From positions 1,030,180 through 1,094,179 of the forward strand of contig OZ199839.1 of the NCBI GenBank assembly GCA_964304625.1: a stretch of 64,000 nucleotides of DNA. The letters run 5' to 3'. The translations under genes were made by a program, and so were the position numbers. The notes under the pieces are model-generated. The model saw only the letters and a list, made by a program, of their open reading frames with translations. It was not told where the DNA came from and searched no databases. Positions 1-63,050 of the stretch are shown piece after piece; positions within the stretch are counted from its first letter, which is position 1; each line of letters starts with the position of its first letter. Source of the stretch: Kudoa neothunni (taxonomy: Eukaryota; Animalia; Cnidaria).

Positions 1-2
1 CT

Positions 3-2804
3 TTGGATGACAATTGGTTTGTTTATAGAGGGAACTTGTTTAGTAGTGATAGTTAGTGGTTTATTAGCATTTTTATCTCGCAATTTTCTGGCATTTGCTT
101 TGTTTTTAGCAATAGTAATTAGTTGATTGACTTCTTGAGAAATCGTAGTAATTTTCGGTTGAATTAATTTTGGAGATTCCTCTTCTATTATTACAGAATT
201 ATCCTCTACAGTGGAGAAGTAAAGGGTATCTTCTTGATTAATTGGAGTAGGAATTGTAGTTGGTGTTGGAGCTTTAGGAGCGTTATATGTTGGGATATTG
301 GTTGGTGGATCATAGTACACAATAAATGATGAATTGGATGAAATTGATGAATTTAGAATGTTTGGTTCCTTTTCAATTAGTTCTAATTTGACAGCAGAAC
401 AGTCGCCTTCAATTGATGAGTTGGGTGATTTATTTGGTGATTTAACACTTACAATAATAACATCTTCATCATCTTCAATGGAATTTTCCAAAATGGCAAC
501 GTCTAGATTGTTTTCCTGTGATGACTGATTCATCGTTGAATCGTTCAATAAACTGTAATTATTGCTTAATTCTACTGTATTTTCATCAGCCATAATTGCC
601 ATTAATTCATTTCTATATTGCTCATGTTGATTATCAAATGTTAGAGTTTTTTGCGACCTGTTTGATATTGTCTTATTAGGCGCTAACATTATGTCTATAA
701 TATTTATTTCCTCTGGGTTGGGAACTATTATTTGCTTAAAATTATTATTTTGATTCTCAATTTCATTTTCCCTAACTATCTGTTCTAGTTTTAGTCGATT
801 TCTTTCAAATTCAGCCCACCATTTAGCTTCCTTAGCATTTTTTAAGCGATAACTGACATTATCGCTATTGCTATTGTTAGCTGAGTTATTGTTATTATTC
901 ATAAAGTTGATTGTCTTGTCAGTGTTTATATTAATGTTAATATTAATATTATTGTTATTATAGTGGTGGTGGTGGTGGTGATTTTGGACATTATGTTGTG
1001 TGGTTAAATTGCATGTTGTTTCATTTCTATTAGATACAGATTTGGGATTGAGAATTGGATTATGGATTGGATTGGATTTGGTGCACGTAGATATAACATT
1101 CTTTTTATATAATTCTAGTGCACCAAGGAAACCGTAATTATTATCAATATTATCAATATTATTATTATTATTATTAATATTAATATTAATATTATTATTA
1201 TTATCATTATTATTATTATTATCATTATTATAATAATAATTTTGGTTAATATCATTCTCCGATGGTTGTAGTGTAACTTTAGCTGCGTCGTCATTATTCG
1301 TGTTTACATTGTTGACATTTGTTGTTGATATTGATGCTGATGTTAATGTTGTTGACGTTGTTGTTGATGTGGAATTAATCAAATTAATCAAATTTTGTTG
1401 AGTTGCAGATGAGTTTAAGGTTGCGGTCGTGTTAACATTGACGTTATTGATATGATCAACAGTTTTATTGGTGTTATTATTATCAATGAAATGATTGTTG
1501 TTTAATAGTGATGGAACAGACTTTTCTTCGTGTAATTGTTGTTCCTGCTGTTGATTAGTAATAGAAAAGGAATTAGTAGGAATGGTGTGAAAGAATGGTT
1601 GAGTCACGCAAGGATTAGCGTGTTGATCATTAATAATATCATTATCAATAACGTTCAATGTAGGAATAGAATTGTTGTTATTTTCCGCGTTAATTTTAAC
1701 ATCGCAATGCGTTGCAGCTATATTAAAAGTTACTTGTTGTTGACCGGTTGCGTCAACCGAGTCAGTTGATGGATTAGATGGATTAGCATGGTAAAGTGAT
1801 GATTTTGGAGAATGTGAAATTGATGAGTTCGAGTCATTGGAATGGGTAGATTCTGTTGGATATAAATTCAGTGGATCATTTAGCGAAATGATGAGGTTTT
1901 CGCAGTCGAGCAATGGAGAGTCGTTTACCGATTCTTCTTCGTCTATTTCTTCGTAGGCGTCGCATGGTAATTCGTTATCAGCGTAATGGTCGGTGGTGAA
2001 TCGATAATTATCATCCGCTAGCTCATTTACAGTAATCTTGTTGGTTTCATTAGTGAGTAAATTAGTGGTGCTTTCTAGTGATGTAGTGTGTGGTGATTTG
2101 GAACAATTGTCGATTGGAATATTGTTATATAAATGAGAATCATATTCCGATGGTTGGATGGATATTGCCAAGGTTAGTTGGATAACCAGATTATCGGGGA
2201 TTAATCCGATTTCCATAAAATTTTCATTTTTCTCGTTTAGTTGATCAATGATGGCGTTTTTAAGAGCATCAATAGAAAGCGAGTAACGTTGCTTTCGCTC
2301 TAGTACTCGTTTTGGGAGTTTTGGATTGCAACGATTTATTACCATCCAAACCAACTTTAAAGATGGCCTGATTTTGACATCTTCTGATGGTTCAATCGTG
2401 TCAATATTGGGACATGGACAAGCCAAGGTAGGTATGTTTCTATCGTAATACTCATCAATTGCGTGTTGAGCGTTTTCCGAGTGTTTAATTGAGGACAACA
2501 TTTCCGTAAAGATTGGCATAGAGCATTGAAACAATGAAATGTACTTTCGTACAAAGTCAGCCACACTTTTAGCTATAGGCGGTAGTTTTGCGCACGTACC
2601 TTTCAATTCTAGATATGAAGAATATAGATGAAAAATCATCGGTGAAAGTTCGTGGTCAAAATTCCTCAGCATCGAGACCTCGCAAACTGATTTTAAAGGT
2701 ATCTTCATAATCAGCGCATCGTAATTTTGCGAAATATGCATAAATTTTCCATTTCCGCTCCGAAAAAACGAAAAATTTTCGCCTGGTAGGGGGCTCGAAC
2801 CCAT
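3..2804 (-). CDS. Long Asn-rich open reading frame (>=934 codons, runs off the left edge); probable N-terminal region of a second tRNA-associated non-LTR retrotransposon ORF
   Basis: Manual translation of the minus-strand frame finds no stop from about 2860 to position 3. It is missing from the ORF track because its stop lies outside the window. It begins MGSSPLPGENFSFFRSGNGKFMHISQNYDALIMK from the ATG at 2804 inside the tRNA half; the next ATG is at 2741. It contains poly-Asn (~1140-1235) and His6 (~963-980). No RT motif is visible in the window, so the retroelement identity is inferred from context. Confidence 0.7.
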   Translation of the reverse strand, partial: MGSSPLPGENFSFFRSGNGKFMHISQNYDALIMKIPLKSVCEVSMLRNFDHELSPMIFHLYSSYLELKGTCAKLPPIAKSVADFVRKYISLFQCSMPIFTEMLSSIKHSENAQHAIDEYYDRNIPTLACPCPNIDTIEPSEDVKIRPSLKLVWMVINRCNPKLPKRVLERKQRYSLSIDALKNAIIDQLNEKNENFMEIGLIPDNLVIQLTLAISIQPSEYDSHLYNNIPIDNCSKSPHTTSLESTTNLLTNETNKITVNELADDNYRFTTDHYADNELPCDAYEEIDEEESVNDSPLLDCENLIISLNDPLNLYPTESTHSNDSNSSISHSPKSSLYHANPSNPSTDSVDATGQQQVTFNIAATHCDVKINAENNNNSIPTLNVIDNDIINDQHANPCVTQPFFHTIPTNSFSITNQQQEQQLHEEKSVPSLLNNNHFIDNNNTNKTVDHINNVNVNTTATLNSSATQQNLINLINSTSTTTSTTLTSASISTTNVNNVNTNNDDAAKVTLQPSENDINQNYYYNNDNNNNNDNNNNINININNNNNNIDNIDNNYGFLGALELYKKNVISTCTKSNPIHNPILNPKSVSNRNETTCNLTTQHNVQNHHHHHHYNNNNININININTDKTINFMNNNNNSANNSNSDNVSYRLKNAKEAKWWAEFERNRLKLEQIVRENEIENQNNNFKQIIVPNPEEINIIDIMLAPNKTISNRSQKTLTFDNQHEQYRNELMAIMADENTVELSNNYSLLNDSTMNQSSQENNLDVAILENSIEDDEDVIIVSVKSPNKSPNSSIEGDCSAVKLELIEKEPNILNSSISSNSSFIVYYDPPTNIPTYNAPKAPTPTTIPTPINQEDTLYFSTVEDNSVIIEEESPKLIQPKITTISQEVNQLITIAKNKANARKLRDKNANKPLTITTKQVPSINKPIVIQ
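2761..2779 (-). terminator. Pol III terminator-like oligo-T tract after the tRNA half
   Basis: Minus strand reads AAAATTTTTCGTTTTTTCG (T5, T6) immediately after the discriminator base. Confidence 0.6.
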
Positions 2805-2813
2805 GGCCTCAAG
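2780..2813 (-). pseudogene. 3' part (nt 40-73) of tRNA-Lys(UUU)
   Basis: CTTGAGGCCATGGGTTCGAGCCCCCTACCAGGCG is identical to 8572-8605. Upstream of it is retroelement 3' UTR (…TTTTTGTGTA) instead of the anticodon loop (…CTTTTAAT). Confidence 0.95.
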
Positions 2814-3268
2814 TACACAAAAATAGCGGGAAAAATAGTGTTCGTAAACTAATCTAATAAATGTTTATTTTGGGAAGGTGGAAGTTGGAATTGGGATGGT
2901 CCTTGATTGGTTGGATGATCTAAATAAAATTAACAATTATTAAACAAGTTACGTGCGGTTTGGAGGAGAAGATTTCGTTTTCGCAACTCCCTGTAAGGGG
3001 GGGTTGCGAAGACGGAATCTTGGGAGGTATCTTCATCGGCTTTTTGGACGGTTGGGATAGTGGTTTTTGGATGGATTTCTTAATGGATTTTTTGCGCGAT
3101 GAAGGTGGAGGTGGAGGCGCCAAAGTCATCACTGGGGTAGCTTTGATAACCATGGGTGGCGTCACAGATTTCTTCTTCTGGGGAGGTGGATTTTTAAAGA
3201 TATCATCAGTTTGGGATAGAAACACTTGGGATGATTGGGAGTTTTGAGGAGAGTTGGAGGTGGGGATT

Positions 3269-6200
3269 TCAATTGTTGGGATGACTTGTTGGATAGTCTT
3301 GATGATATTGGTGGATTTGGTTGCTGGAGTGCGTTTTTTTAGGCGCGTTTCGCAGCAGTGGTTTTTGGTTGTCCACATAGACACCATTTCTACAAATGGG
3401 TGTAGCGGAGGTTCCAAAGACATGGGCTCTCCAGATGGTCGAAGAGTCCAAGAGAACAGATCTGGTGATTGCTTTCTTTAAGGCTGACACCCTCTTTTTG
3501 TTTTTAACGAAAAGAGCTTTATAAACATCATTATTGGGCTCATAATGAGCCCCCAAAGAACCGTAGATCAGCGCATAAAGTTGGCACGAGTAGCCCTTTT
3601 CCATCCATTGTGATTGCTCCTCCCTGTACTTGGCAACCTTGTGTTGGTATACTTCTTCCAGGCGAGAGAGTGACGATTCGAAGGTGATGGAAACGTCGCA
3701 GATAATGACATCTTTGGTTTGGTCATTGAGGAGTACAATATCTGGTCGACGGTTAGAGGGGATCTGTGGGAAAATGGTGTCGAGGAATGTCACCCAATTC
3801 TTATTGGGCTTCATCTGTTCAGCGATGAGGTCAACAATATGGTTGTGTCGAGCGGACCTTGCTCTTTCACCGAACTTGCAGCCACCCAGAATATGTCCTA
3901 GGTGTTCCGTTGCCACATGGCAACGTCTACAGTCGGATTCAGAACAAAGTTTACGTATTTTCAATACGCACTTTGTGGGGAGCGCATTCACTCGCGCCAG
4001 GATGCCAAAGCGGTAGACATAGGGAGATACATCACCTTGGTTAATCCAGGAGTTTGCGACTTTGCTTCCCACAAAACACTCAACGGATCGTCCCTGCATA
4101 CGCTGAGACTTCCATACGTCGAGGAACATCGACTGAACATGCCACCGAATACGGCGTACTCGGGTGGCACCTCGCTGTTGATGAGGGGGAATGTGTGGTG
4201 GCGGACTGAGGTAATCAGAGTCAATGTCAATCTTTGAGGGAGACTGTTCATCGACTTGCTTGACTTGGAGTCCAAGAGACTTTGCATTCAAGCGGATGCT
4301 AGAGAAGATACTTCTCACGTCTCTGGACTTGATATACTCAGTGTCCCTGTTAAAATAGTCCTCAGGGGTGAGACTTTCGTTGGTTCTCTTACCAACGATG
4401 GATAAAATTGCGTCCTCAGACAGTTTGGCGACTCTTTCATCCGCGGAATGGATGAGGTTGAGTGCGGAGGCTAATCGGAGGGCACAAAAGTCGAGTTTAA
4501 GGCATCTCAGACCGAATCCCCCCACTGCACATGGAGTGTACAGTAGGGACTTTGTAACAGATTCGGGCATAGCTAACCAATGGCGAACTGATGACCGAAT
4601 CTCAGAATCGATTTTCTTGAGGTCCTCGATGCGGATAATGTTATTCTTCATAGAATACTCAAGGGTGGGCATTAAGTAAGTTTTCGTGAGGTTAATCTTC
4701 ATAAAGTGCAGTAGGGGAGCGTTTGAAACTTTTTGAAGGTTCTCACTAAACTTAGGGAAGCAAGGTGGCAGGTCTTTAAACGACTTTAGATTTTTACAAG
4801 TACCTAGGTACTTATAAAAATCCTCCATCAGCGGGATTGGCACACCTTGGAGAACATATGGTTGGATTAATGTGGAATTTACAATGCGCGTTTTATTCTT
4901 AAATGTGACATTAAGTGTCGCACTCTTAGAATGGTTAATGCGCAGACCAAGATCATTAATAAATGCTTCGAATTGATGGAGGAGGACATTCATTTGGATA
5001 TTATTCTCGGTCAGCAACACAATGTCATCGGCATATGCCAACGCACCAAAAACCTGACCGTGAAGTTTATATCCCTGTTTTGAGTCATCAATTCGTCGCA
5101 AAAAGGGGTCCAAAACGAGGTTAAAAAGTAGGGGGGATAAGGGGCATCCCTGTCGTACACCTTTACCATAAGGGTAGAGGTAGCCAGTTCCGCCGCTCTT
5201 ATCCGTAACCTCGTTGAAGCTGTTTGCGTACATATGTTTTAAGAGGTTGGTGATTTGATGGGGGATATTAAAGTGGTTAAGTTGCTTTAATATCTCGGAA
5301 TGGGGGACGGTATCGAAGGCCTTTTTCAGGTCTATCCAGACAGCAGATAGAGGGTTCTTCTCACGTCGTACGTCATCTAAAATTTCCTGGAGAATGAACG
5401 CGTGTTCAACGCATCCATTTCCACCGACGAATCCTTTTTGAGACGGGCTTAGTTCAACTAGGGAGGCGAGCTTTTTATTGACCACACTCATAAACAATCT
5501 GTAGATTGTTTGCGTAATAGAGATTGGTCTATACGCTGAGGGGTCCAACACATTAATTTCGCCGTCGGTCTTTGGCAGGAGTATGAGACGGCTAACAAGC
5601 CAATCATCAGGGACTCGCTCAGAATTAAGGATCCTGTTGAACAACTTTGCTAGATGAGAATCCATAGAGGGCACCTTTTTCCAAAAGGCCATATGTATTC
5701 CATCCTTACCAGGGGCAGTATCTTTCTTTGCGCGGTCCAGAGCAGCACTGACTTCTTCATCAGCAATATAAAAATCGCTGAATCGGTTACCAGACTGATA
5801 GAGGGCTTCTGTGGTATACGGCACCGGTTCTACTTCATTAAGTGATACTTGAGAGGAGATTTTAACTTTCTCAGGGGGCTTAATAAAAGTAGGTTCTTCA
5901 TCATCTAGCTTAGAGGCTGGAGAGGCTAAAGGGCTAAAGTTGGGAAATTTAAACTTAGGGGTAGGTGGAGACAACGGTTCACGGAATATGAGGTCTTCAG
6001 GCGCAACCTTTTCAGGCTCACCATCATTAGATTCATTTTCAACATGATCCGAAGGAAGAGAAGACATTTGACTGTTATCCAAAGCTGGAATCTTAATAGG
6101 GGAAAGTTCGTCAGCATTCGTACCACAGAGAATTGTCTTAACGTCGTTGGAGTTGATGAAGGAGAGAGAATCAACTATTTCCTCAGCAGATGCTTCGCAC

Positions 6201-8596
6201 CACTTTGGCCTAGCCTCAGTTATTTCACGAAAACATCGCTTTTGGTTACAGCGATATAAAACACGCAGACGTTTTGCTTCATTTTTAGGGGCTTTTTCAA
6301 CTGGAGAATCATCTTTAATGGTGACTTGAGTGGTTGATTCTTCAGGTGCATCTTGAGTCGGTGTAGGGGAAGCAAGAATATTCTTTAAAGCTTCATCGAC
6401 AAAGGTTTTCGCGGGCTCCGGAGCTTTCGGATGGTAAACCATCTTCAGTTCTTTTGCACCGTTATGCGCCGTTGTGATGAAGTGAGTATATAAATCATTA
6501 ATGGGTAATTCAGAGTGAGTGGACATAACAGACCTGAGCTCATTAGAGACGCGCTCCAATGTTTCAGCTTGTTTCTTACGAAATTCAGCTGCCCTTTTAC
6601 GAATTTTGTCATGTTTCTCACGAGCCGCTATTTCATTCATTACTTCCTCCGGAATTGAAGAGGTTTCATGTGCTTTTTCATTAGCGGCATCACGTTTGGC
6701 TTGTAAATAAGATGGGGGTGGTGGAACAAAGATAGAGCGCAGTTCGGAATCTGCGATATCTTTTTCCAGAGCGGGAAGATCTAGAGGTTTGTCTAGATTT
6801 GGGTTGAGTGGGATTGTATCAACATTTTCATGAGATTTAAAGGATTTTTGTCGACAATCACGCAAATAATTATCAACAAAGGCAAGAGAGTGTTGGCGTT
6901 TACTTGGTTTTAATTTGGATTGAGCAAAAATAGAATCATTAGGCGTAAAAATAACTTCCTCAACATTAGGCTCAAACTCGGACATAATTAATGGTGTAGC
7001 GCAAACTTTCTCCTCATTAAGTGCTTCCACATCAATATCGGAATTGTTAATAATAATAGATTCATCAATATTGACGGGTTGCATAGAATTAAGAGCTTTT
7101 TCATTAGAATTACCATCAATTAACTCATTATGGTGCTCAATGTTAGATTTGGTTAAATTACTCGATTTAACACGCTCATTCAACTTCTTACTAATTATAG
7201 TAGGTATAAATTTGCCAAACTTATTCTTAGTAAGCGCGGATTTTGATTTTTTGGGTTTAACGTTAACTGGTTTAGCTTTAAACTCATTTGGAGCATCTGC
7301 GTCATTAAACACGATATCGCTATCGTCCTCACTTAAAACTTTAGAATTCTGACCAATAAATTCCATGTTTTCATTTTTAATGGCGTTTGCTGCGTTAAGT
7401 GATTGAAAAGGTGTAAATTTAGCACTATCATTATTCAATGAATCATGCGCAGGCAACACCGAAGTGTCGTCGTCGTCGTTTACACTTAAAATTGATTCAT
7501 TATCACCAGATTCAACGTCGTTTAATTCAGTATAGCCTTCCATACCTTCATAAACAACGTTAAATGCTGGGTTTCCTACAGTTAACTTGCTCATAAACAT
7601 TGCGTGAGCATCTGGATCAACTACCAAACCATTAATGTTCTGCAATGCTTTAAAGCTATCAAACGAAGAAGAAATTTTATTATTGGTGGAATTAACAACG
7701 CTAAAAGGTTGTTCTAACTCGCAATTGTCACTGTTGTACTCAATACTATCAACAGGTGGATTATTAAGGTTATTGTTACTCATTAATATGAGATTAGGTT
7801 GAAAATTGTTGCGAGCTTTGCCAGAACGAGTAGAAGATGATTTTTTAATGTTATCTGATTTAATATAACTAAGGAAAGAATCTAAATTGTCATGAGAGGC
7901 GAATTTAGATTCAAAGTCACGGCCGGAGATTAGGACCAGATTATCTGCGACAATAACATTCCCATCGTCATTATACAGGATTAAAGGTAGTGTGTTGTTA
8001 TTTATCATGAAAAGAGCACTCTGACGGATACTCTTTAACAAATTGTTAATTTCCGATTTTTTAGTGCCAGATGGCACCGCTTTCGGCTTATTAGAGCGCA
8101 ATGAAACTTTTGATGCTGAGTCACTATCGGCACGTTGCACGTGCAAATTAAAGTCGTTAGTTTTATAAGGAAAAGTGGAGTTGTTAGATGCATCAATACG
8201 ATCATTAGATGTAACATTTGCACTACTATCTATCGATAACGCAGTAATAGGCAAAGTACCTTGTTTGTAGGCCATAGAGAGGGTGGGATCTTCGGACAAC
8301 TTTGATGATATATCTTCAGAAAAAGTTAACTCAACAAAGCGGGCTATACGTTGGAGAAAAGGAGACCCTTGGAGCTTCAAACGCCGACGTCGCAGAAACT
8401 CATCAAGGTAATATTGAATGAAATCTGAGTAGCCTGTTAGGTCGACTTCAGCTAAACTGAGGTCAAACCCAACAAAAGTGGCATCGTTAGATTCCTTATA
8501 ACCTAACCAACCATCTAGTGCTAAAATTTCGCGTTTTCGAGCTGAAAAAAAGGTCGAAAAACGAAAAATTTCGCCTGGTAGGGGGCTCGAACCCAT
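3269..8596 (-). CDS. Non-LTR retrotransposon polyprotein: disordered N-terminus, reverse transcriptase, CCHC zinc knuckle, restriction-like endonuclease
   Basis: RT motifs APGKDG, YRPISITQTIYRLF, QKGF, DLKKAFDTVPH, GVRQGCPLSPLLFN, YADD (5024-5035) and YKYLG. These are followed by GGFGL, CRRC-x7-H-x4-C, RHN, RRPDIV…DVSI…KVAKY and GSLG. The frame is also open to 8647 through the whole tRNA (1792 aa); the start codon is uncertain. Confidence 0.95.
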   Translation of the reverse strand: MGSSPLPGEIFRFSTFFSARKREILALDGWLGYKESNDATFVGFDLSLAEVDLTGYSDFIQYYLDEFLRRRRLKLQGSPFLQRIARFVELTFSEDISSKLSEDPTLSMAYKQGTLPITALSIDSSANVTSNDRIDASNNSTFPYKTNDFNLHVQRADSDSASKVSLRSNKPKAVPSGTKKSEINNLLKSIRQSALFMINNNTLPLILYNDDGNVIVADNLVLISGRDFESKFASHDNLDSFLSYIKSDNIKKSSSTRSGKARNNFQPNLILMSNNNLNNPPVDSIEYNSDNCELEQPFSVVNSTNNKISSSFDSFKALQNINGLVVDPDAHAMFMSKLTVGNPAFNVVYEGMEGYTELNDVESGDNESILSVNDDDDTSVLPAHDSLNNDSAKFTPFQSLNAANAIKNENMEFIGQNSKVLSEDDSDIVFNDADAPNEFKAKPVNVKPKKSKSALTKNKFGKFIPTIISKKLNERVKSSNLTKSNIEHHNELIDGNSNEKALNSMQPVNIDESIIINNSDIDVEALNEEKVCATPLIMSEFEPNVEEVIFTPNDSIFAQSKLKPSKRQHSLAFVDNYLRDCRQKSFKSHENVDTIPLNPNLDKPLDLPALEKDIADSELRSIFVPPPPSYLQAKRDAANEKAHETSSIPEEVMNEIAAREKHDKIRKRAAEFRKKQAETLERVSNELRSVMSTHSELPINDLYTHFITTAHNGAKELKMVYHPKAPEPAKTFVDEALKNILASPTPTQDAPEESTTQVTIKDDSPVEKAPKNEAKRLRVLYRCNQKRCFREITEARPKWCEASAEEIVDSLSFINSNDVKTILCGTNADELSPIKIPALDNSQMSSLPSDHVENESNDGEPEKVAPEDLIFREPLSPPTPKFKFPNFSPLASPASKLDDEEPTFIKPPEKVKISSQVSLNEVEPVPYTTEALYQSGNRFSDFYIADEEVSAALDRAKKDTAPGKDGIHMAFWKKVPSMDSHLAKLFNRILNSERVPDDWLVSRLILLPKTDGEINVLDPSAYRPISITQTIYRLFMSVVNKKLASLVELSPSQKGFVGGNGCVEHAFILQEILDDVRREKNPLSAVWIDLKKAFDTVPHSEILKQLNHFNIPHQITNLLKHMYANSFNEVTDKSGGTGYLYPYGKGVRQGCPLSPLLFNLVLDPFLRRIDDSKQGYKLHGQVFGALAYADDIVLLTENNIQMNVLLHQFEAFINDLGLRINHSKSATLNVTFKNKTRIVNSTLIQPYVLQGVPIPLMEDFYKYLGTCKNLKSFKDLPPCFPKFSENLQKVSNAPLLHFMKINLTKTYLMPTLEYSMKNNIIRIEDLKKIDSEIRSSVRHWLAMPESVTKSLLYTPCAVGGFGLRCLKLDFCALRLASALNLIHSADERVAKLSEDAILSIVGKRTNESLTPEDYFNRDTEYIKSRDVRSIFSSIRLNAKSLGLQVKQVDEQSPSKIDIDSDYLSPPPHIPPHQQRGATRVRRIRWHVQSMFLDVWKSQRMQGRSVECFVGSKVANSWINQGDVSPYVYRFGILARVNALPTKCVLKIRKLCSESDCRRCHVATEHLGHILGGCKFGERARSARHNHIVDLIAEQMKPNKNWVTFLDTIFPQIPSNRRPDIVLLNDQTKDVIICDVSITFESSLSRLEEVYQHKVAKYREEQSQWMEKGYSCQLYALIYGSLGAHYEPNNDVYKALFVKNKKRVSALKKAITRSVLLDSSTIWRAHVFGTSATPICRNGVYVDNQKPLLRNAPKKTHSSNQIHQYHQDYPTSHPNN
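8547..8571 (-). terminator. Pol III terminator of tRNA-Lys
   Basis: Minus strand AAATTTTTCGTTTTTCGACCTTTTTTT (T5, T5, T7) directly after the tRNA. Confidence 0.7.
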
Positions 8597-8644
8597 GGCC
8601 TCAAGATTAAAAGTCTCGCGCTCTACCAACTGAGCTAACCAGGC
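8572..8644 (-). tRNA. tRNA-Lys (anticodon TTT)
   Basis: GCCTGGT TA GCTC AGTTGGTA GAGC G CGAGA CTTTTAA TCTTG AGGCC ATGGG TTCGAGC CCCCT ACCAGGC G. Perfect 7-bp acceptor stem, 4-bp D stem, anticodon stem with one G-U pair, A and B boxes, discriminator G. One U50-C64 mismatch in the T stem. Confidence 0.95.
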
Positions 8645-9910
8645 CATGCATTGTTTTGGTATGGTTAGTTTATATAGTTTATTTTTGACGATACATCATC
8701 CTACTAAAACTTTAAACATTAATGTCTCTGATAGTTCAAATATAAATAATTTTTCCAAGATTGAACTTTTATCACAAAGTTTTTATTCAAGTCATATTAT
8801 GTGAGATACTTATCTGATTTCATGTGTATTACCTATATATTATTCCTTAATTAACGATTTTAATTCAGATTTCTATATATTTACCTTTTGATACTTTTGC
8901 GAAATTAAAGTTATATTTTTTGTGCATTTTCTCTATAATTGTTTCACTGATTCTACGTCTATCAATAGTTTTCAATAACTTTGTACTCTTTATTAAGTTT
9001 CATGTAATCATCTTCACTATTCTCTACTTTCAATTCTTCTACCTGTATATTCAAAAAAACATTAATTATAGTCCACTCCAGATATGTAAGGATAAATACT
9101 TAATTAAATAAAAAAAACAATGAAAACATTATTTAATAGAGCTTTTATATTCAACTTTATATTAACATCTTGTATTATACAGGCATTTAAATTGTGGGTT
9201 ATTATATTGGACTTTAATCATAAAATTATAAAAAGTTATCAACGAATAAATCTTATACTAGCGAATGGTATTTCAAAACAACTAATGTTGATTTATTTTA
9301 GGAAAAAGATGCGATGGCTACTCTAACTCTAAACATCACAATGATTCATCTGCGAAGAAAATTGCTAATGGACATTATAATTTCAAATAAACATTGTATA
9401 ATATTGCAGGTTTAGTGAATTTAAAGTGTCTTATTGAATAAATAATAGAATTCATCATTTACATCGTGTTGGATTTGATATTCAATACAAAGATAACTCC
9501 GACAATTTATTCATTGTCTTAAACTCTATAATGAAGAAATATCCATGATATTGCAATAATGTTTCAATTTTTGCCAATTTCTAGCATGTCCAACTTTCCA
9601 AATAACTTAACTTAACTTAAGATTTACACATTCTAAAATAAATACAAAAATAATCATTAAACAATCTATTCTTGGTTATCATACATATTTGAAAGTTAGA
9701 TTGTTATTGGGCTTGTTAAGATCAAAATGTTTTAATACCTTACTCGAAAAGAAGTTATTTGTGGAAGAAAACATGATACCTTTAAAAAAATGCTGCATAA
9801 CATAAGAAACAGTTAAAAATATATTTAACATGTTGCTTCGATGCAAAGTTTCTAAAATAATTATCAGAGAACTCAAAAACGTATGTATATATATATATAT
9901 ATTGTGTGTA

Positions 9911-20679: not shown

Positions 20680-21054
20680 TTAGTCTTTCCTAAACATGTA
20701 GGCATCTATACACGAATCGATCATATCATCCCTTTTATTAGTGACATGTCGGAGGGATCTTTTGAGAGCATTCCAAGTCGACTCTATTTTGTTTGTGTGA
20801 AGTCCTTCCGAATTTACAAATTCATATTTGTGGATTACAACAGAATGTTGAAACCCCAATTCATCCAGACGTGAATATGAAGGCCAACCATCCGTTACAA
20901 TTAGGGATCCTTCGATGACATTTCTGCAAATCATGTCCTCGAGGGTTGCTTGGTCCCTTATTAAAGTTTTATCAAAAAAAACCTTATTGTTTGTTATGTA
21001 CATAATCTCTTCCCAGCCCTGTACACAAACCTGGTAATTAGTTGAGTAATCCAT
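20680..21054 (-). pseudogene. Merlin/ISXO2 (IS1595-like) transposase remnant
   Basis: RDQATLEDMICRNVIEGSLIVTDGWPSYSRL…HSVVIHKYEFV…GLHTNKIESTWNALKR is a typical ISXO2 DDE core; the N-terminal part is lost. Confidence 0.85.
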
Positions 21055-27989: not shown

Positions 27990-29150
27990 GAATAAAGAAA
28001 TGATTATATATAATGATTTTATATATAATTATGATTCAAGAACAGAAAGGGGACTTAGTTGGAGATGTCATAACCGAGGATGTTGCGGTAGAATCTATAC
28101 ATGTATTGGGGGAAACACGTGATTGATGAGATTATCCATTTGAAAATTCGCTAAAAAACCAGACATCAAGCAATTATTACTCCATTACCACCTTCTGATA
28201 TCATCATCAAGGCCTTCGAAAATGAATACGAAAGTATTTCCGATTCAATAACTAAAATTAGGCGGCAAATGGGTATTAAGCCTATCTCTAAATATGACGA
28301 TATTCCAGAAAATTTAAAGAAAACACTCTGTGGTCAGCAGTTTTTGCATTTCGATAGTGGTGTTGGCTCTACTGATAGAATCTTAGTATTTTCCCATCCT
28401 AAAATAATCGAATTTTTGAATAAATCCTTGGTATGGTGATGGTACTTTTTACATTACACACCCAAATAGGAGCACATGTATCACCCATAGTTTTTTGCTT
28501 GGTGCAAAACAAAAAATATGAAACATATTCTACTTTTTTCAAAATGATTTATGATAAAGTTGGTCCCTATGAACCCAAATATTTTTTCTGTAATTTCGAG
28601 GTAGCAATTAGGAAATCGTTTAATGAGGTTTTTAAGAAAACTGGAATTAAGCACTGCCATTTCCGCTTCGCCCAAACAATATGGGGAAAAATAAAAAATG
28701 TAGACTTGGTAAGTCTTTATAAGCAATCGAAGATTCTAAAATCCTACATACGTAAAATAATATTATTATGTTACGTTCCAGAATGTGATGTCGTCAGGAT
28801 CTACGAACTCTTAAAGGATACATTCAAGAATAAACTATGTGGTATAAAAATTGATGAATTCAAGAAATTTTTAGGAAAGGAGTGTATTTACAAAGAAACT
28901 AATACAAGCACTGGATTGTTATCATACGCGGAATTTTGGTCTGTATATGACCCTGTTCTTGGGGGGGGGGGGGGGGGGGGTATGATTCCACAAATAATGC
29001 ACTAGAAGCTTGGCACGGTTCTCTGAAAAGAAAGACTCACTCGGTACATCCTAATCTAAGGAAATTCATAATGCTATTACCAAAAGATGTGAGAAAATAC
29101 AACTTATATGATGGGCTTTCATACCATGAAAGTATAAGCATGTATTTTGG
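27990..29150 (+). pseudogene. Mutator (FLYWCH + MULE) transposase remnant
   Basis: WRCHNRGCCGRI, FLHFDSG…DRILVFS, WYGDGTF, PIVFCLVQNKKYETY, CHFRFAQTIWGKIK and TNNALEAWH across frameshifts. Confidence 0.85.
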
Positions 29151-37390: not shown

Positions 37391-39502
37391 CCCTTAATCG
37401 ATACCCTGCGTGATTTCCTCGATTCGATAACTTGGGCTAGACGAGCCCGCCCATTCAAAGAGATGGTATTATTTAAATCAGTAATGATATTATTTTAAAT
37501 GTTCTATCTTAATTTGTAGAAATATGAGGGATAAATAAAAATAAGACAGTTTAACAAATAAAACTAAAATTTTCCACACTCGCTACATGTTATAATTTTT
37601 TTTTGAATACTCATTACATACATAGCGCGTGCATTTTACGAAAATTTGTTTGCTCCTCCTGCGAATTGATTTAGGACAAAAAATGCAACGCTTTCTTTGT
37701 TTAATGACGCCTTTTTGAGACATAGAGGACCGATTACTTGAAAAATTAAAGCCGACGATCTCCAGTGAGCGCTTTACTGCAGGTTGACAACTAACCTTAA
37801 AACTTTCATCTCTTCTTTCTTGATGGAGTTTAATCATCGAGACGGCCAACTATAATAAAAACTGATGCCTATCATCACACTTTTTATGAGCAGAATTATT
37901 TTTTGACTATACACTACATAGGAGTAAAAGGCTGCCAAATCAACAACCTGACGAAAAACTGCTACAGACCAACGATTTGATTTTCGTTTACCACTGTAGA
38001 TAGACACACATTGATCACAGTATCAGTACCGCATTTCTTGACATTATAGTCTCGAATTGCATTTGGCTTTGAATGGAATTCTGAGCTTATTTCTTTAGAT
38101 CGATGTTCGGATCATAAGATAATTACGGCGCAATTTTTCTTCGGAACATACGATATAATAGTAAATTGCTTGTAAAATCCAAACAACGACGAAAATAATG
38201 GTCTTGATTTGTTTGTCATGAATTCTGATGGAATAAATGTTCTACACTTTCGAACCGTTCCAAGAATTGACGTCTTACGTTGCTGTAGGTGCTCAGTGAG
38301 TTTCCATGTTATGAAGTAATTATCATAGGTGGTTCTCCTATCCGAGTTAAGTGGGTAGTTTACTAGGTCGGTGACAACTTTAAAACTCGGGGATTTTTCC
38401 CGTTTTTGATTTTGTTGATCTATGCATGGAACGATGTTGGAAACATAACGTATTTCGCTGTCACATTCCATCCAAAATTTAATTCCATACTTAGACGGTT
38501 TTTTGGTATATACATCAAAAATTTCAACCGTCCTCCGAATGAATACAGCTGTTCGTCAATCGTGATATTGGATCTAGGGGTATAACTTTCTTTACAGATT
38601 TTGACAAAAGATTTGAATATATTTCTTATCGGTGAAAAAGCGTCGTCGGATTTGACATTTTTTCTTAACCAATATTGATCGAATCTAAGGTAGAGCCAAA
38701 TCTTTTTGAATCTCTCACAAGACATTGTTGAACGAAACAAAGGTTTACCGTGAATTTCGTGCCATAAAATCTTGTTGTCCTTAATATTCGATTTATAGGC
38801 CCAGAGAGTAAAAGTTGTTCCAAAAAAGCTTTAAATTCAGTTAAATCAACGGGTTTCCACTTTTCACCTAGATTCTCGAATCCTTTTTTTTATTGTGTAT
38901 TCAATAATTTCTTCCAGCATCTCGTTTTTCATGGAGTGATAAAACATCGTCTCTGGAGCTGTAGCATCAATATCATCAATAGGCGTTATAACAACTTTAT
39001 TGTTATCGATAATATTGTTTGCAGGTGTTCTTCCTGGTTTGAATTTGGATCCCAAACAATCGATTTATCTTTTGAAATAAAAACATTTTTTCGTGGGTCG
39101 AATTGTCACTAATCTGTATCGATTCATCGTTGTTTTTGTTTCAAATTGTTTTTCCTTTAAAATGATTTCCAGATTTAACTTCAAAAATATTTAATATTAT
39201 TTACGATGAATGATACAACTTATACCCGAATCAGCTTCTCCATATGATTTATTATTACATAAATATACCGCTGATTCTGTCTAACTAACACTTTCTGCAT
39301 CTTAAGATGAGTATTCATATGAAACATCAGATTCCGCCATTATATTGTACCACAAGTTTAGGATTGCCATAAACGTACTTAACTTTGTTAACGTGAAGGC
39401 TAATTTGGACTAAAAACAGCCATAATTTAGGGTATTTTTGAGCACTTTACTGCGAAGATAGGCTCGTGGAATCGAATCCATGGTTATCGTATCGATTAAG
39501 GG
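37391..39502 (-). mobile_element. piggyBac element with frameshifted PGBD4-like transposase
   Basis: Perfect 14-bp TIR CCCTTAATCGATAC with TTAA on both sides. Peptides FRSTMSCERF…LRFD, TIDEQL, DNYF, GTVRK and the C-terminal RKRCIFC. Confidence 0.92.
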
Positions 39503-44003: not shown

Positions 44004-47000
44004 TTATCGAAATAAACTGTTGTATTCTTTACAAATAGTACTAAATAAGGTATAGAAATGTTTGTCCATTTTAGCAGAATCGTTGTTGGATGAGAGAGTA
44101 TTGGATACATTGGAGATGAGATGGCCGATTCGTTGAACCATCAATCCAAGGAAGCTGAACGAAGGAGATCCTCTTAGAACAGTCACGAAAAATCGCAGCA
44201 GTTTAATTGATTTAATAGTGATGCTGACATATTTTGCGTTGTTATCTGTGTCGTTAGTATTGTTTTGTGGTGTTATAGGTTTTTGAATAGAGCAAACACT
44301 CAAATAGAGCATATTTATTTGTAACACATCGTAGATAATTTCCGAGATATAAGTGTAGATTTCCACTTGATCACGCACACCAAGGTTAGTTTGCATACTT
44401 TTGATGACACTTATCGCCGACGACTTGTTCACTTGATTGTTGTTATTGTACACAAGATGATACAGGAAAACCACTATCCATTCGTAGTAGAAAAATTTAA
44501 TGGGATAGTTGTTACTGAAAGTTGGCAGTTTGTGGTAGAGTAACCGATTGATAATGTGGAAGGATGGGGAGCCTTGATGGCTGTCCACAGTTATACAGCA
44601 GTTATTAGGGTTGTCTTGAAAGGAGCCATGGTAAAGATCAATGAGGTCTGTATTGTGAAAGAGCAACTTGGGCACAATACTTAAACAAAGAATGTCCATG
44701 ACAAAACAACTGTTCAATTGTTTAGTAGAGTTGTTCTCGTTGACAACTGTGGATAGGCCTTGTTCGAATTTCACTGTCAAATTGGAGTGAGGGAAATTAT
44801 TACAGTAGAACAGATGGAAGATGTCATGGAAGAGTGACGGAAACATGGTATCACAGAGTGTATTTGGCGTTGTGAATTGTATGTCAACCAGCGTGTTCAA
44901 TGTGATAAGTAGCATAACATAAAAATTGACAAGCATTTCGCTATCGAAAACAAGTTTGAAAACAGGTGAGTTCGGTTCGGTTCCAGTGACTACATCAGAA
45001 AACTGAGTCAAAAAATCGTTCCTCAAATAAGTGCTTATTCCATGCGATCTGTGCATCAAGCTGAGCAAATCCACAACCAGAATTAACATTCGTTGTTTCG
45101 AGCTCAACCTGAGTGAAGTAACAACTTGTGGATTGATTGTGAACAAATACAAAATTTTAATCGCCATAGCAATCATTCGTGCTATTATTTCAAAGTGTTT
45201 TGAGCAGTTAGGATTGGTGTTACGTTTAAAATTGAGAACATTTAAGCTCGAGGTTGTTGGTGCTCCAGCATGATCACCGTTATTTGAATTGAATGCGGTG
45301 AATATTGAAAACTCTCTGCAACAACACACACCTACAAGTGTTTTATCAAGAACTGCTTCGAACGAATTCTTCACGCTTGAATCCGGTTCGTTCAAACACT
45401 CTTTGACGAAACAATTCAACAAACGATCTGTAACGTCCGGATTTGAAAAGTTAAAATTGTCGATGGCACTAAATTTGTGCAAGGCGCCAGATCTCATATC
45501 TCCACTAATATTTTCATCATTAGAATTTGTAAATGAATTGGCACTGATGCCTCCTCGATAATAATGTAGAATTTTTATGATTATCTCAAAGCAATTGTAC
45601 AGTCGTTCAATCAGTACATCCATAATTAATGGATTTTGATTGACAACGTCGGCGACATTTGACGACATATTGTTGCTCTGTTCTAGTTCTAGCAAAGAGT
45701 CAATAGCCCGCCGAATCAAATTTTCATTGTTTCCAAGCAAATCATTTAGTAAAGAGTTTGAATAATCGGCAGTTAAATCAAACTGTGTTTTTATGTTAGT
45801 ATAATTTCCATCATTATTCTGTAAAATTGATTGATCGCTGGTAAAAATATCAAACAACACTTGAAAGGATTGATTTGGTGGAGGTATAGGTTGATTTCTG
45901 TCTTCACTAACAGCATCTGCCGCAGCTGTAGCATTAGTTGTGGACGAATCAAAATTGTTAACATTATCACAAATGATATTGTTGCCGGTGGACGGAAGAG
46001 AAGACAACAACGAGCTATTCTCAAGTAAATCCGATGGATCGATATCATTTGGAGCACGTAAAATTTGCAGCATGATATCATGGCATTGCAGGTTCATATC
46101 GTTGTACCAAGTGAGCAGATTGGCTAGCTCACCAAATGCCACCAAAGAATCTGTTGTTTTGATCTGAGTTATCAATGTTTGGATGCGATCCATCATTTTT
46201 AAATACAGGTTGATTTTTTCTTTAATATTTAACATGGTGTAGATTTCATTCTTGTGGATACACAACACCATCTGCATGTACAATATTTGAAGACAGGTGT
46301 CATGTTGAAGAGATCGAAACACTGTGTGTTGTTTTAATAGATTGGAAAAATCGGTAAAAGAGCTGAACGCTTCTTTATTGAAGTAGAATGGAGTTTGGAC
46401 CTGTGATTTCGTAACTGATGCAGAGTTGCTAGAATCAGAAGGTTGATTAGTGGAGAAATTGTTCACATCTTCTGAACCAATAACTCTGTTGGTTGATTGA
46501 TGTAAACAATTATCGTTGTTTATATTGGATTGATTATTATTATTGTTGTTGTTGTTATTATTATTAAGCTCAGTGTTGACAAGTGGTGGTGGATTTGTAT
46601 TGTTGGTTGAAGATGCTGCTGCTGACATGGTGGAAACCAACTCACTCCATTGTGTCCATCTCATGCTGTCGTATTGTTTGATGTGTTCGCGAACCAAGGC
46701 AAGTTGGTGTTGCGACATGAAACGTGGCAAAAATGAAACCAAACGTAAATCAGCCATCAAAGTTATCGTCATAGCGTGATCTGATTTGAGAGCCAACTCA
46801 AAATTATAAAGATAAGTGTGGTAGTAGAAAAGTAGATTCTCGGGGGTGAAATTCGACCGATGAACCATATTATAACAGATGGTCACTTGTTGAACTAGGT
46901 CGGAGTTGAATTTGGCTTTAAGAAAGTCAACCACTATTTGGTTCATCAACACAAACAACAAATAGTTGTCCACATTGTATTCTTTGTGTTGGAAAGTGGT

Positions 47001-47607
47001 TGCGGACATGAACGCATCGAAACATTCGTTAAATTTCTCGCGATAATAGAACACATTAATCTCAATCTATTTAGCATAAATTTTTACCAACGTTGATTCA
47101 ATATGAATTGAGTAATACCAAATAGTAGATAAATTCGTTCAGAATTTCGATCATTATAGGGGGAATACATAACAATCTTGTACAGGCTATAAACAATAAA
47201 TTTCTAAATCACAGAAAACTGGACAATCTTACGCCATTTCATTCTCAAATTGGCACCCACATTCGACAAAAGAATCATTCTATCGGATTGTGGTAGAAAA
47301 TCTAGATAAAGAATTTAGAAAAGTTATTAGTCCAACAGCAGCTATAATTCACTTACTGTTTGGAAGAACTATAAAATTGCCCGAAACGTTATTGACATTA
47401 TTGACGTTATTCGAATTATTGATATTATTGGCGTTATTCGCAGTATTGTTGGCCTCTAAAATTAAAAACATGTATTTAAACCAAACAACGCCATTATCAA
47501 ACAATTCTTAGGATAATTTAGGTTTTACGAGACTGATTAGTTGGTTTCAGGTTGTAGTTGTTGAATGTTGAATTGTTTTGTGTTGGAAATTCGTGATTTG
47601 AAGTCAT
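44004..47607 (-). CDS. Unidentified ~1125-aa Asn-rich protein, 5 exons (47607-47529, 47455-47357, 47301-47233, 47186-47119, 47066-44004)
   Basis: A 3.06-kb stop-free last exon. Four GT-AG introns (73, 55, 46, 52 bp) give phase-consistent splicing. No domain recognised, and further upstream exons are possible. Confidence 0.75.
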
Positions 47608-60412: not shown

Positions 60413-62253
60413 AGTGGAGAGCACGCGAAGGAATGAACTTGCCATCCCAGTTTGGTACAGGCAAAGTATTGTAAGTGCCAAATATTGTTGAACACGTGAA
60501 TTCATGATAAAAAGCTTTTATTGACAATATAAATAGATAATGAACAAAATATATATTTAAAATGTTTCAGTGTCCAATTCATCACCATAAACAAAAACGA
60601 ATTTCTCCAATTCTTCTCGGGTTACCGTATTTATTCGAATATAACACGCACCCAAACGTTGAATTCGTTTTTAGGTAAAACATTATTGCACATATACTAA
60701 AAAATGTGGTGTTTAAAACAGTGCTTAATTTTTTTAAGCATATTCCTAGTTGAAACAAATTCACAACCTAAAAAACCCTATAGAAGACTAAAATAGACAC
60801 TTTTTGAAAAAGAAACGGAGTTAAACTCATTATAAAATTCGAGAAAAACGTGGGAACACAAACACGATGGCCAGAGGAGCTATTATACTAAGACTGACAA
60901 ATTATAAAAAAGATCAATTTTCAAATATCTTCTGGCTGGTGTAATATTAAAAAAAACTCCATGATTAACTCATCCACTAAATTCGAATATTTGTTGTCAA
61001 AAAATTTGTACACCAATTTTTAAAATTATTAATTTCCATAGGTTTGCGACATATCTGAGAAAAGCGGAAAAGTTAGTTGATCCTGTCTGCATAGGAAACA
61101 TGGATGGAACATTAATATTATATGATACATCAGGAACCGAAGGATCGAAAATTTAGGGACTTAACCGATAACAGTCAGAGAAAATAGTCATGAAAACAAA
61201 TTTAAGTGTCGTTTTAAACTGTATAAAGATTTTACTAAGACAACATAAATGTTACGTTCTAACTAAAAATACTGCCAAAGGAAGAATTTTTCTAATTATG
61301 TGGTTATGATAAATAATATCTTTTAAAATTGATATTTCGTTGGTTACCCCTATTACTTATGTGTCTTTACAATATATTGTTATTTTATATAGTTCTCTTA
61401 TTTATCTGTAATAAAGTTGGAAGTATAATAAGATTTGAAAACAAGTTACGCAATGATAAAATTAAAGTTATGCCCAAAAATTATATATTCCATATAAACT
61501 AGAGTTTTATGGAAATTTATTCCTTTACGCTAATAGCACAAAATATGAAAAAAAGTTAGAGGTTTTAGCAATATAAAATGGTTGTTTTGTTAGTGATGGT
61601 TTCATTAGCTTGGCTAAATATTCCATTTTACCTCGTTGATAACTTAAAAAAATTATTTTGAAATTACTTGTTGAGTCGCTTTAACGTAACGAGTCTTCCC
61701 ACATTAATGATATAATGATAGACGGATTTCAGCAACTATATTCACAGATGCTTGAAAATTCTTTTTTAACAATTCGAATAAACACAAACTTATCCAAAAC
61801 ACTAATTACTCTTATATGAATTATTATAAGAGCAATAATTACGACAAATTTGGACTGATCAAGTTTTGAATTAATCATGACAAATACTCTCGGCCATTTA
61901 AAAGTTACAATTTCAATATTTTATGAATAGTAAGCATAAGATAATTTTAATTGACCCAGCCAATTTGTTGAAACGATTGATTTTATATATTTCCGAAAAT
62001 TAATTACAACTCTAAATTATTGGTGTAGTAGGTCCTGAAACGACACAAATTTATTGAAATACACTTGAATTTCTGTTGATTTTTATAGCTTAATTTATTA
62101 ACTTTTAAAATTTGACTCACATAAAATCATTCACAAATCAAATACATCATCATTTAGTTTAAAAAAGAATGAGATATTATGAATACGCGCACGCATTTAT
62201 TGCAGTTACGACACGCGAGTAACTGTTCGTTTAGACTCGTGTATTGCTTTAAA

Positions 62254-63050
62254 ATGCCAAAAAATAAAGGTAACTTTAAATCTTCAGTCGTATAAAATCA
62301 TGAAACGTCACTCAAAATGTGTGTTTGTAGGTAAGGGAGGAAAGAACAGACGTAGAGGAAAAAATGAAAATGAGAACGAGAAAAGAGAGCTGATCTACAA
62401 AGAAGAAGGCCAAGAATACGCTCAGGTGGTTAAAATTCTTGGAAATGGTTACGTGGAAGCCATGTGTTTTGATGGGATGAAACGTTTATGCCATATAAGA
62501 GGTAAAATGAGAAAGAAGGTAATAATAACCGATTGAGGCAGTTAAAATGGCATCTCTTGGAATCAACGCCTATCTATTATGATGTATTGTAGGTTTGGGT
62601 GATCCATGGAGATATTGTGCTGGTGGGTCTTCGAGATTTTCAAAACAGTCGTGCCGACATTATCCACAAATATTCTGCTGTAGAATCCAAGCGATTAAAA
62701 GCCAACAATTGTATCCCCGATTCCGGTAGTTTACGCTTTTATTCAACTGAAGATTGTTTGCTGTTTTAACAACTTGAGTCGCTTACTTTTGAACTTTAGT
62801 GAGATTAATCGAAAATGCCATGGTGGATGGTAACGCTAACGATGAAGATGATGAAATCTATTTCGATTACACCGCTGACACCGAAGTTGAGGTGAACCCA
62901 AGACGTAGAGATTTCTATGCCGGTATTTCTGATGACGATTCCGATGAAGACGCTGAAGATGATGAGGACGTCAAATACGAGCTGGAAGATGATGACACCA
63001 ACATTGATGACTATGAAACTGATGAACCTGTCAATTCACACAGAATTTAG
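62254..63050 (+). CDS. eIF1A: Eukaryotic translation initiation factor 1A, 4 exons (62254-62269, 62331-62518, 62593-62725, 62800-63050), ~195 aa
   Basis: [20 protein letters not shown]…[15 protein letters not shown]…CFDG…[12 protein letters not shown]|VW…[11 protein letters not shown]…ADII.KY, followed by an acidic tail. GT-AG introns of 61, 74 and 74 bp. Confidence 0.95.

What the first reader, a model, noticed from the sequence alone, without database searches (positions are those of the whole stretch)
1..2813. Hidden second >=934-codon ORF behind the tRNA half: probable tandem stack of different tRNA-targeting elements
Seen: a stop-free minus-strand frame from the tRNA half to the window edge, not listed in the ORF track. 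Like ORF A it has a ~200-aa ordered-looking N-terminus followed by a long Asn/Ser-rich tract. Similarity to ORF A is only faint (DNLV motif; ISQEVNQLITIAKNKANARK versus IPEEVMNEIAAREKHDKIRK). Its first own ATG is 39 nt from the tRNA end, leaving no room for a normal Pol II promoter. Inference: an older or divergent family inserted first and rebuilt the tRNA, and element A then inserted into the rebuilt tRNA, giving a head-to-tail array from one self-renewing target.
Basis: partly seen in the sequence, partly recalled or inferred. Interest (0 to 1): 0.8.

Follow-up and report, generated by a model that had tools for sequence, protein, structure and literature searches.

The report
Second retrotransposon behind a tRNA gene
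The open frame is the front half of a second, recently active jumping gene stacked behind this fish parasite's only lysine(UUU)-tRNA gene; it belongs to a family that enters essential single-copy tRNA genes at the anticodon loop yet always leaves a complete tRNA gene in front of itself.

Summary
Observation confirmed. Window 1-2813 is the 5' 937 codons of a 6.44-kb R2-group non-LTR retrotransposon (family B). The frame ends at an assembly gap; a 99.3% identical copy further left carries RT, CCHC and restriction-like endonuclease and ends at another tRNA-Lys 3' half. The array reads full tRNA-Lys(UUU), A, B, gap, B, B, A, A, then two decayed B relatives. B is therefore not simply the older layer: both families are recent and alternate. 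The genome matches Kudoa neothunni (Myxozoa). 18 of 37 tRNA types seen head such elements; all 31 tRNA halves found match their own array's head gene, cut at nt 37-40. Two metagenome samples show the same layout. All families share a helical N-terminal domain in place of R2's zinc fingers and Myb, with no Pfam, PDB or fold match. Best model: target-primed insertion in which the element RNA brings the tRNA 3' half and terminator (inferred, 0.6; no RNA data). tRNA-targeting relatives are known; rebuilding single-copy targets across many tRNAs was not found in papers searched. This scan noted the system before at other loci of this genome.

The parts
2780..2813 (-). tRNA-Lys(UUU) 3' half, nt 40-73, joining the 3' end of element A to the 5' end of element B
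   Evidence: 34/34 identical to the head gene; junction types also seen in contigs of the source reads
2762..2779 (-). B-type trailer with two T-runs (Pol III terminator-like); differs from the A-type trailer and follows the family
1..2813 (-). 5' part of element B (family unit 6,444 bp); open frame of 937 codons cut by the assembly gap left of the window
   Evidence: twin copy G000:C2:1018354-1024797 is 99.3% identical over this part
2109..2747 (-). Helical N-terminal domain shared by all tRNA-linked families; no zinc finger or Myb motif
204..2108 (-). Low-complexity Asn/Ser/Thr-rich linker with microsatellite length alleles between B copies
84..143 (-). ISQEVNQ motif, kept in the B-lineage element at tRNA-Lys(CUU), without a counterpart in A
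2814..8605 (-). Element A, 5,792 bp from tRNA nt 40 to the next half; 99.4% identical to two copies further left
3269..8647 (-). ORF A, open through the whole tRNA gene; RT at about 4910-5575, CCHC at about 3878-3931, PD..D/ExK endonuclease at about 3626-3751
8572..8644 (-). Complete tRNA-Lys(UUU) gene heading the array; the only full copy found in the genome

Best explanation
B is a site-specific non-LTR retrotransposon of the R2 group with one ORF of about 2,080 codons: helical N-terminal domain, long low-complexity linker, RT, CCHC, restriction-like endonuclease. SHOWN: domain content, 3' end joined to nt 39/40 of tRNA-Lys(UUU), confinement to that one array, alternation with family A, one complete tRNA gene at the head. 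FROM KNOWN R2 BIOLOGY: the endonuclease nicks the template strand at the 3' edge of the anticodon loop and the RT copies the element RNA from that nick, which leaves the old 3' half behind the new copy. INFERRED: the element RNA begins with tRNA sequence, so a full-length cDNA ends in its own tRNA 3' half plus T-run terminator and is joined to nt 1-39. The single-copy gene is restored, can be hit again, and grows a stack with the newest copy nearest the head. 5'-truncated copies would destroy the gene and are not kept. Two unrelated subfamilies (A, B) take turns at the same gene.
For: Twin copy has RT (AFADD), CCHC and RLE; best PDB matches are R2 proteins, E 3e-68. B's 3' body occurs only in this array; one full tRNA-Lys(UUU). 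All 31 halves found match the head gene of their own array, 14 tRNA types, starting at nt 37-40. The trailer 3' of nt 73 follows the family of the element behind it even where families alternate. In the Gln-UUG array (X X Y X X Z W V) the half before Y has two changes at nt 69-70 that turn G.U into A-U pairs with the head's 5' strand, plus its own trailer, while both neighbours carry the head version: a pure DNA copy of the target would need two changes and two reversions. 26 of 29 junctions scored are followed by a full 5' region rather than a truncated body. A copies differ by 20 synonymous and 8 replacement changes, dN/dS about 0.11, p 4e-8, which fits replication through a working protein. 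Precedent: many R2 RNAs carry up to 36 nt of upstream 28S target, proposed to anneal and give uniform 5' junctions (PMC3774820).
Against: No RNA run holds this DNA, so the RNA 5' end is unknown. No HDV-like ribozyme, no T-run depletion and no general trailer hairpin were found, so how the RNA gets its tRNA part is open. Gene conversion between tandem units could also tie halves to families; some 5' regions are mosaics. Each assembled B copy has 1-nt homopolymer indels in different places, and the order across the gap may join two haplotypes.
Confidence: 0.6

Rival explanations
1. Same element, but the half is an ordinary long target-site duplication: bottom-strand nick at nt 39/40, top-strand cut at or just after nt 73. 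The element RNA starts at the trailer. Family-linked halves arise later by gene conversion.
For: Identical 34-bp halves at all five Lys-UUU junctions. RLE elements can make long duplications: 20 bp for reptile Utopia (PMC4640811); 22-49 bp for CRE/SLACS (from memory). 5' regions of neighbouring units are sometimes near-identical for 400-740 nt, as conversion would give.
Against: Needs conversion or reversion to explain the Gln Y half. Predicts harmless 5'-truncated copies behind an intact tRNA, and almost none were seen.
Confidence: 0.27
2. The arrays grew mainly by unequal crossing-over, or are partly doubled by the assembly joining two haplotypes across gaps; retrotransposition supplied only a few founding copies.
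For: 200-N gaps in both Lys arrays with 1.5-kb and larger overlaps on both sides; the two left B copies differ only by homopolymer indels; k-mer coverage about seven.
Against: Synonymous excess between A copies; different families joined at the same nucleotide with their own 3' tails; the same layout in two other samples; contigs of the source reads show A-to-B, B-end-to-half and A-to-decayed-unit junctions.
Confidence: 0.1
3. The frame is an Asn-rich exon of a host gene.
For: No Pfam match in the windowed part.
Against: The 99.3% identical copy continues into RT, CCHC and RLE and ends at a tRNA half; the N-terminal domain occurs in the genome only in these element arrays.
Confidence: 0.01

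Closest known systems
LIN15_SM (tRNA-Arg), LIN25_SM (tRNA-Glu) of Schmidtea and NeSL-1_TV (tRNA-Pro) of Trichomonas, NeSL-related RLE elements (PMC4640811)
   Same: RLE non-LTR elements with 3' ends inside tRNA genes, sense orientation, AT-rich tails; LIN15_SM hits several Arg isoacceptors.
   Different: LIN15_SM joins 5' of the anticodon, here the join is 3' of it (nt 37-40). The machine-read supplement shows one 5' junction with tRNA ending in the T-arm, not a whole gene. No report of arrays behind single-copy genes or of a spread over 18 tRNA types.
R2 (28S rDNA), e.g. R2Tg, R2Bm
   Same: Single ORF with RT, CCHC and PD..D/ExK endonuclease; best PDB matches (E 3e-68 to 1e-40); some R2 RNAs carry upstream target sequence (PMC3774820).
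   Different: Target is tRNA, not 28S; no N-terminal zinc fingers or Myb; no HDV-like ribozyme found; R2 breaks one unit of a multicopy gene.
Utopia (U2 snRNA)
   Same: RLE element; tandem insertions and arrays of different families in U2 genes of Phytophthora and Nasonia; 20-bp duplications in reptiles.
   Different: One multicopy target kept across eukaryotes, N-terminal zinc fingers; not reported to restore the gene.
Dada DNA transposons (PMC8869645) and Dictyostelium TRE elements (from memory)
   Same: Many tRNA types used as targets; Dada hits the anticodon arm.
   Different: Dada is a DDE transposase that disrupts multicopy genes; TRE elements use an APE endonuclease and land beside, not inside, tRNA genes.

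Membership tests
R2-group (RLE) non-LTR retrotransposon | Non-LTR type RT domain | tested here: met
   Twin B copy: AFADD motif, phmmer E 3e-68 to R2 proteins against 1e-16 to L1
R2-group (RLE) non-LTR retrotransposon | CCHC knuckle and PD..D/ExK endonuclease C-terminal to the RT, no APE domain | tested here: met
   Motifs read in the twin copy and aligned to R2 residues 924-1137, E 2e-14; no APE Pfam match
R2-group (RLE) non-LTR retrotransposon | Precise 3' junction at a fixed target site, no LTRs | tested here: met
   Both B 3' ends join tRNA nt 39/40
R2 clade proper | Insertion in 28S rDNA | tested here: not met
   All located 3' junctions are in tRNA genes
R2 clade proper | N-terminal C2H2 zinc fingers and Myb domain | tested here: not met
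   Motif scan finds only the C-terminal CCHC; no Pfam match in the 937-aa N-terminal part
R2 clade proper | HDV-like 5' ribozyme | tested here: not met
   No Rfam match at E up to 5 in 20 head and junction loci (B's own 5' region was not among them); loose descriptor over 36 regions including B: 3 hits, 3.0 expected from shuffles, none in B
NeSL/Utopia/LIN group | RT tree placement with named NeSL, Utopia or LIN15/25_SM references | not testable with these tools
   No named reference sequences on hand; the tRNA-linked elements form their own clade (100/99) against 30 mostly unnamed database hits
NeSL/Utopia/LIN group | Small-RNA gene as specific target | tested here: met
   tRNA genes, 14 types with the half confirmed

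The most novel reading that the evidence does not exclude
The tRNA half carried on the element RNA helps decide which tRNA gene is hit, so the family retargets by swapping about 35 nt of RNA, and every insertion overwrites the 3' half and terminator of the host's only gene for that anticodon. In the Lys families the AUG inside the carried T-arm may also start the ORF.
Probability: 0.25. Interest if true: 0.9.

Novelty: new variant of a known kind. Interest (0 to 1): 0.74.

Why it matters
Site-specific retrotransposons are thought to survive by choosing multicopy targets they can afford to break. Here a lineage lives in essential, mostly single-copy tRNA genes by leaving them whole. One genome holds about 18 natural target variants of one RLE clade with a DNA-recognition region unlike R2's, and B and A give a pair of distant proteins with the same target. 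That makes the old question of how R2-group proteins choose and change targets directly testable, and bears on R2-based gene insertion tools.

Tried and rejected
General hairpin right behind the tRNA: present in a few families, but mean z -0.07 against -0.60 for element-free tRNAs. Pol III read-through of the whole element: no T-run depletion against synonymous shuffles, and T5-T7 runs lie right behind the tRNA. HDV-like or other Rfam ribozyme: none. ISQEVNQ as homologue of A's IPEEVMNE: A's stretch aligns about 100 residues past the window edge. Fold of the N-terminal domain: Foldseek best E 0.64, VIA best Z 5.5, atlas TM under 0.35, all generic helical matches, so no fold is named and novelty of fold is not shown. 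Word search with the domain alone was blank but cannot see long proteins; the full HMMER search gave two hits, both the same kind of element. JGI metagenome scan: nothing. An independent WGS run with the same species label gave no reads.

Full report
Observation. The frame is real: 954 stop-free codons on the minus strand from 2864 to the edge, 937 from tRNA nt 40 at 2813. It starts in a 34-bp exact copy of nt 40-73 of the tRNA-Lys(UUU) gene at 8572-8644. The window begins right after a 200-N assembly gap, which is why the frame has no end here.

What lies to the left. On G000:C2 the minus strand reads: full tRNA (1038823), A (5,792 bp), half, B 5' part, gap, B 3' part, half, B (6,444 bp), half, A, half, A, half, then two decayed B-lineage units, the second behind a decayed half. 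The B parts on both sides of the gap overlap by about 1.5 kb and differ in two microsatellites and one base, so they are different copies or haplotypes. The complete B copy holds RT, CCHC and PD..D/ExK motifs; its best solved relatives are R2 proteins (E 3e-68). Its four frame breaks, and those of the other copy, are 1-nt homopolymer indels, each absent from the other copy; with k-mer coverage near seven they are probably read errors, so an intact ORF of about 2,080 codons is inferred, not shown. B's body is found nowhere else in the genome and there is one full tRNA-Lys(UUU) gene. A copies differ by 20 synonymous and 8 replacement changes (dN/dS about 0.11). Contigs of the source reads show the same junction types but are not independent.

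Host. Three large contigs plus one of 18,219 bp (by subtraction) match the Kudoa neothunni assembly: 40.2 Mb, three chromosomes, an 18,219-bp mitochondrial contig (PMC12239612). That paper has no mention of tRNA or retrotransposons.

Genome-wide pattern. 39 tRNA genes of 37 types were seen, a lower bound; only Gly-GCC and Ala-AGC are doubled. 18 types have an element directly behind them. At 31 element 3' ends a tRNA 3' half was found, always of the array's own head gene, from nt 37-40, covering 14 types; six decayed ends had none. Targeted genes never have G39 (0/17 against 7/16, p 0.003) and mostly A38 (15/17 against 6/16, p 0.004; post hoc). In an RT tree all these elements form one clade (100/99); B groups with the Lys-CUU, Thr-UGU, Ser-AGA and Thr-AGU elements, A with the elongator-Met element and a second Lys-CUU element. 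So A and B reached the same gene from different branches. Two ENA metagenome samples hold the same layout: element, tRNA-Asn half, element, half, element (L084), and a 1,596-aa element between two tRNA-Gln halves (L114). One has an element 5' end behind a full tRNA-Ser(CGA), a gene that is free in this genome (L115), so occupancy shifts between species.

The protein. A and B versions match by profile comparison (90.5%, E 1e-6), including the DNLV segment. It is all-helical with a basic turn and has no Pfam, PDB or fold match; among 1.84 billion representatives only two proteins match, both such elements. It sits where R2 has zinc fingers and Myb, none of which B or A has; a role in target binding is an inference. 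The ISQEVNQ motif is B-lineage only.

Mechanism. The 3' join at nt 39/40 is what target-primed reverse transcription from a bottom-strand nick gives (known R2 chemistry). The open point is where the upstream copy of nt 40-73 comes from. The terminator-bearing trailer follows the family of the element behind it. In the Gln-UUG array the half before family Y has two stem-keeping changes and its own trailer, between units with the head version. 26 of 29 scored junctions lead into a full 5' region. These points favour an RNA-carried half, with precedent in R2 RNAs that carry up to 36 nt of upstream target (PMC3774820). A long staggered cut plus gene conversion remains possible, as mosaic 5' ends exist. 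How the RNA is made is unknown: no RNA run holds this DNA, and ribozyme, hairpin and Pol III read-through tests were negative. In A, B and the Lys-CUU family P the ORF is open through the half and in frame with the ATG at tRNA nt 49-51, and A has no own Met before the conserved helix; most other families have stops there and their own ATG, so this is at most a Lys-specific feature.

Comparison and verdict. RLE elements in tRNA genes (NeSL-1_TV, LIN15_SM, LIN25_SM) and mixed tandem arrays (Utopia in U2 genes) are known (PMC4640811). I found no paper on myxozoan tRNA-targeting elements or on restoring single-copy tRNA targets (the library lacks many subscription papers and Repbase reports). B works like R2 but fails the R2-clade tests of target, N-terminal domains and ribozyme. 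It is a new variant of a known kind. Earlier agents of this scan reported the same system at other loci of this genome; those notes agree but are not independent support. Interest 0.74.

Noticed in passing
L030, L047, L050, L052, L114 (about 85 nt behind the tRNA-Gln 3' end): A GT-AG stretch of exactly 34 nt with donor, branch-like and acceptor motifs lies just before the first ATG in Gln-lineage elements of two samples; host introns average 49 nt. An intron kept in a retrotransposon would mean an unspliced template and a spliced mRNA.
   Followed up: partly
window 8482-8491 and 50-90 nt behind the tRNA end in at least 12 families: Conserved motif TCTAAYGAYG, often right before the first ATG but out of frame in A, so kept at nucleotide level; promoter or RNA signal unknown.
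   Followed up: partly
G000:C3:3364046-3369150 (Lys-CUU array): Chimeric unit: 740 nt of family P 5' end joined to a 5'-truncated A-lineage body; this array also has a 200-N gap with a doubled block.
   Followed up: partly
G000:C2:1817224-1820532 (L082, L105, L107): Decayed element of the same clade interrupted by what looks like a Tc1-type transposon; no head tRNA or half seen in the stretches read.
   Followed up: partly
window 20683-21054, 28424-29002, 38115-38830: Transposase fragments: ISXO2/Merlin-like, MULE and piggyBac-like.
   Followed up: no
window 62253-62900: Host eIF1A gene with short introns.
   Followed up: no
window 44007-47066: 1,020-codon open frame without a credible Pfam match.
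   Followed up: no
whole genome: Nearly one tRNA gene per anticodon; the two doubled genes (Gly-GCC, Ala-AGC) have identical flanks.
   Followed up: partly
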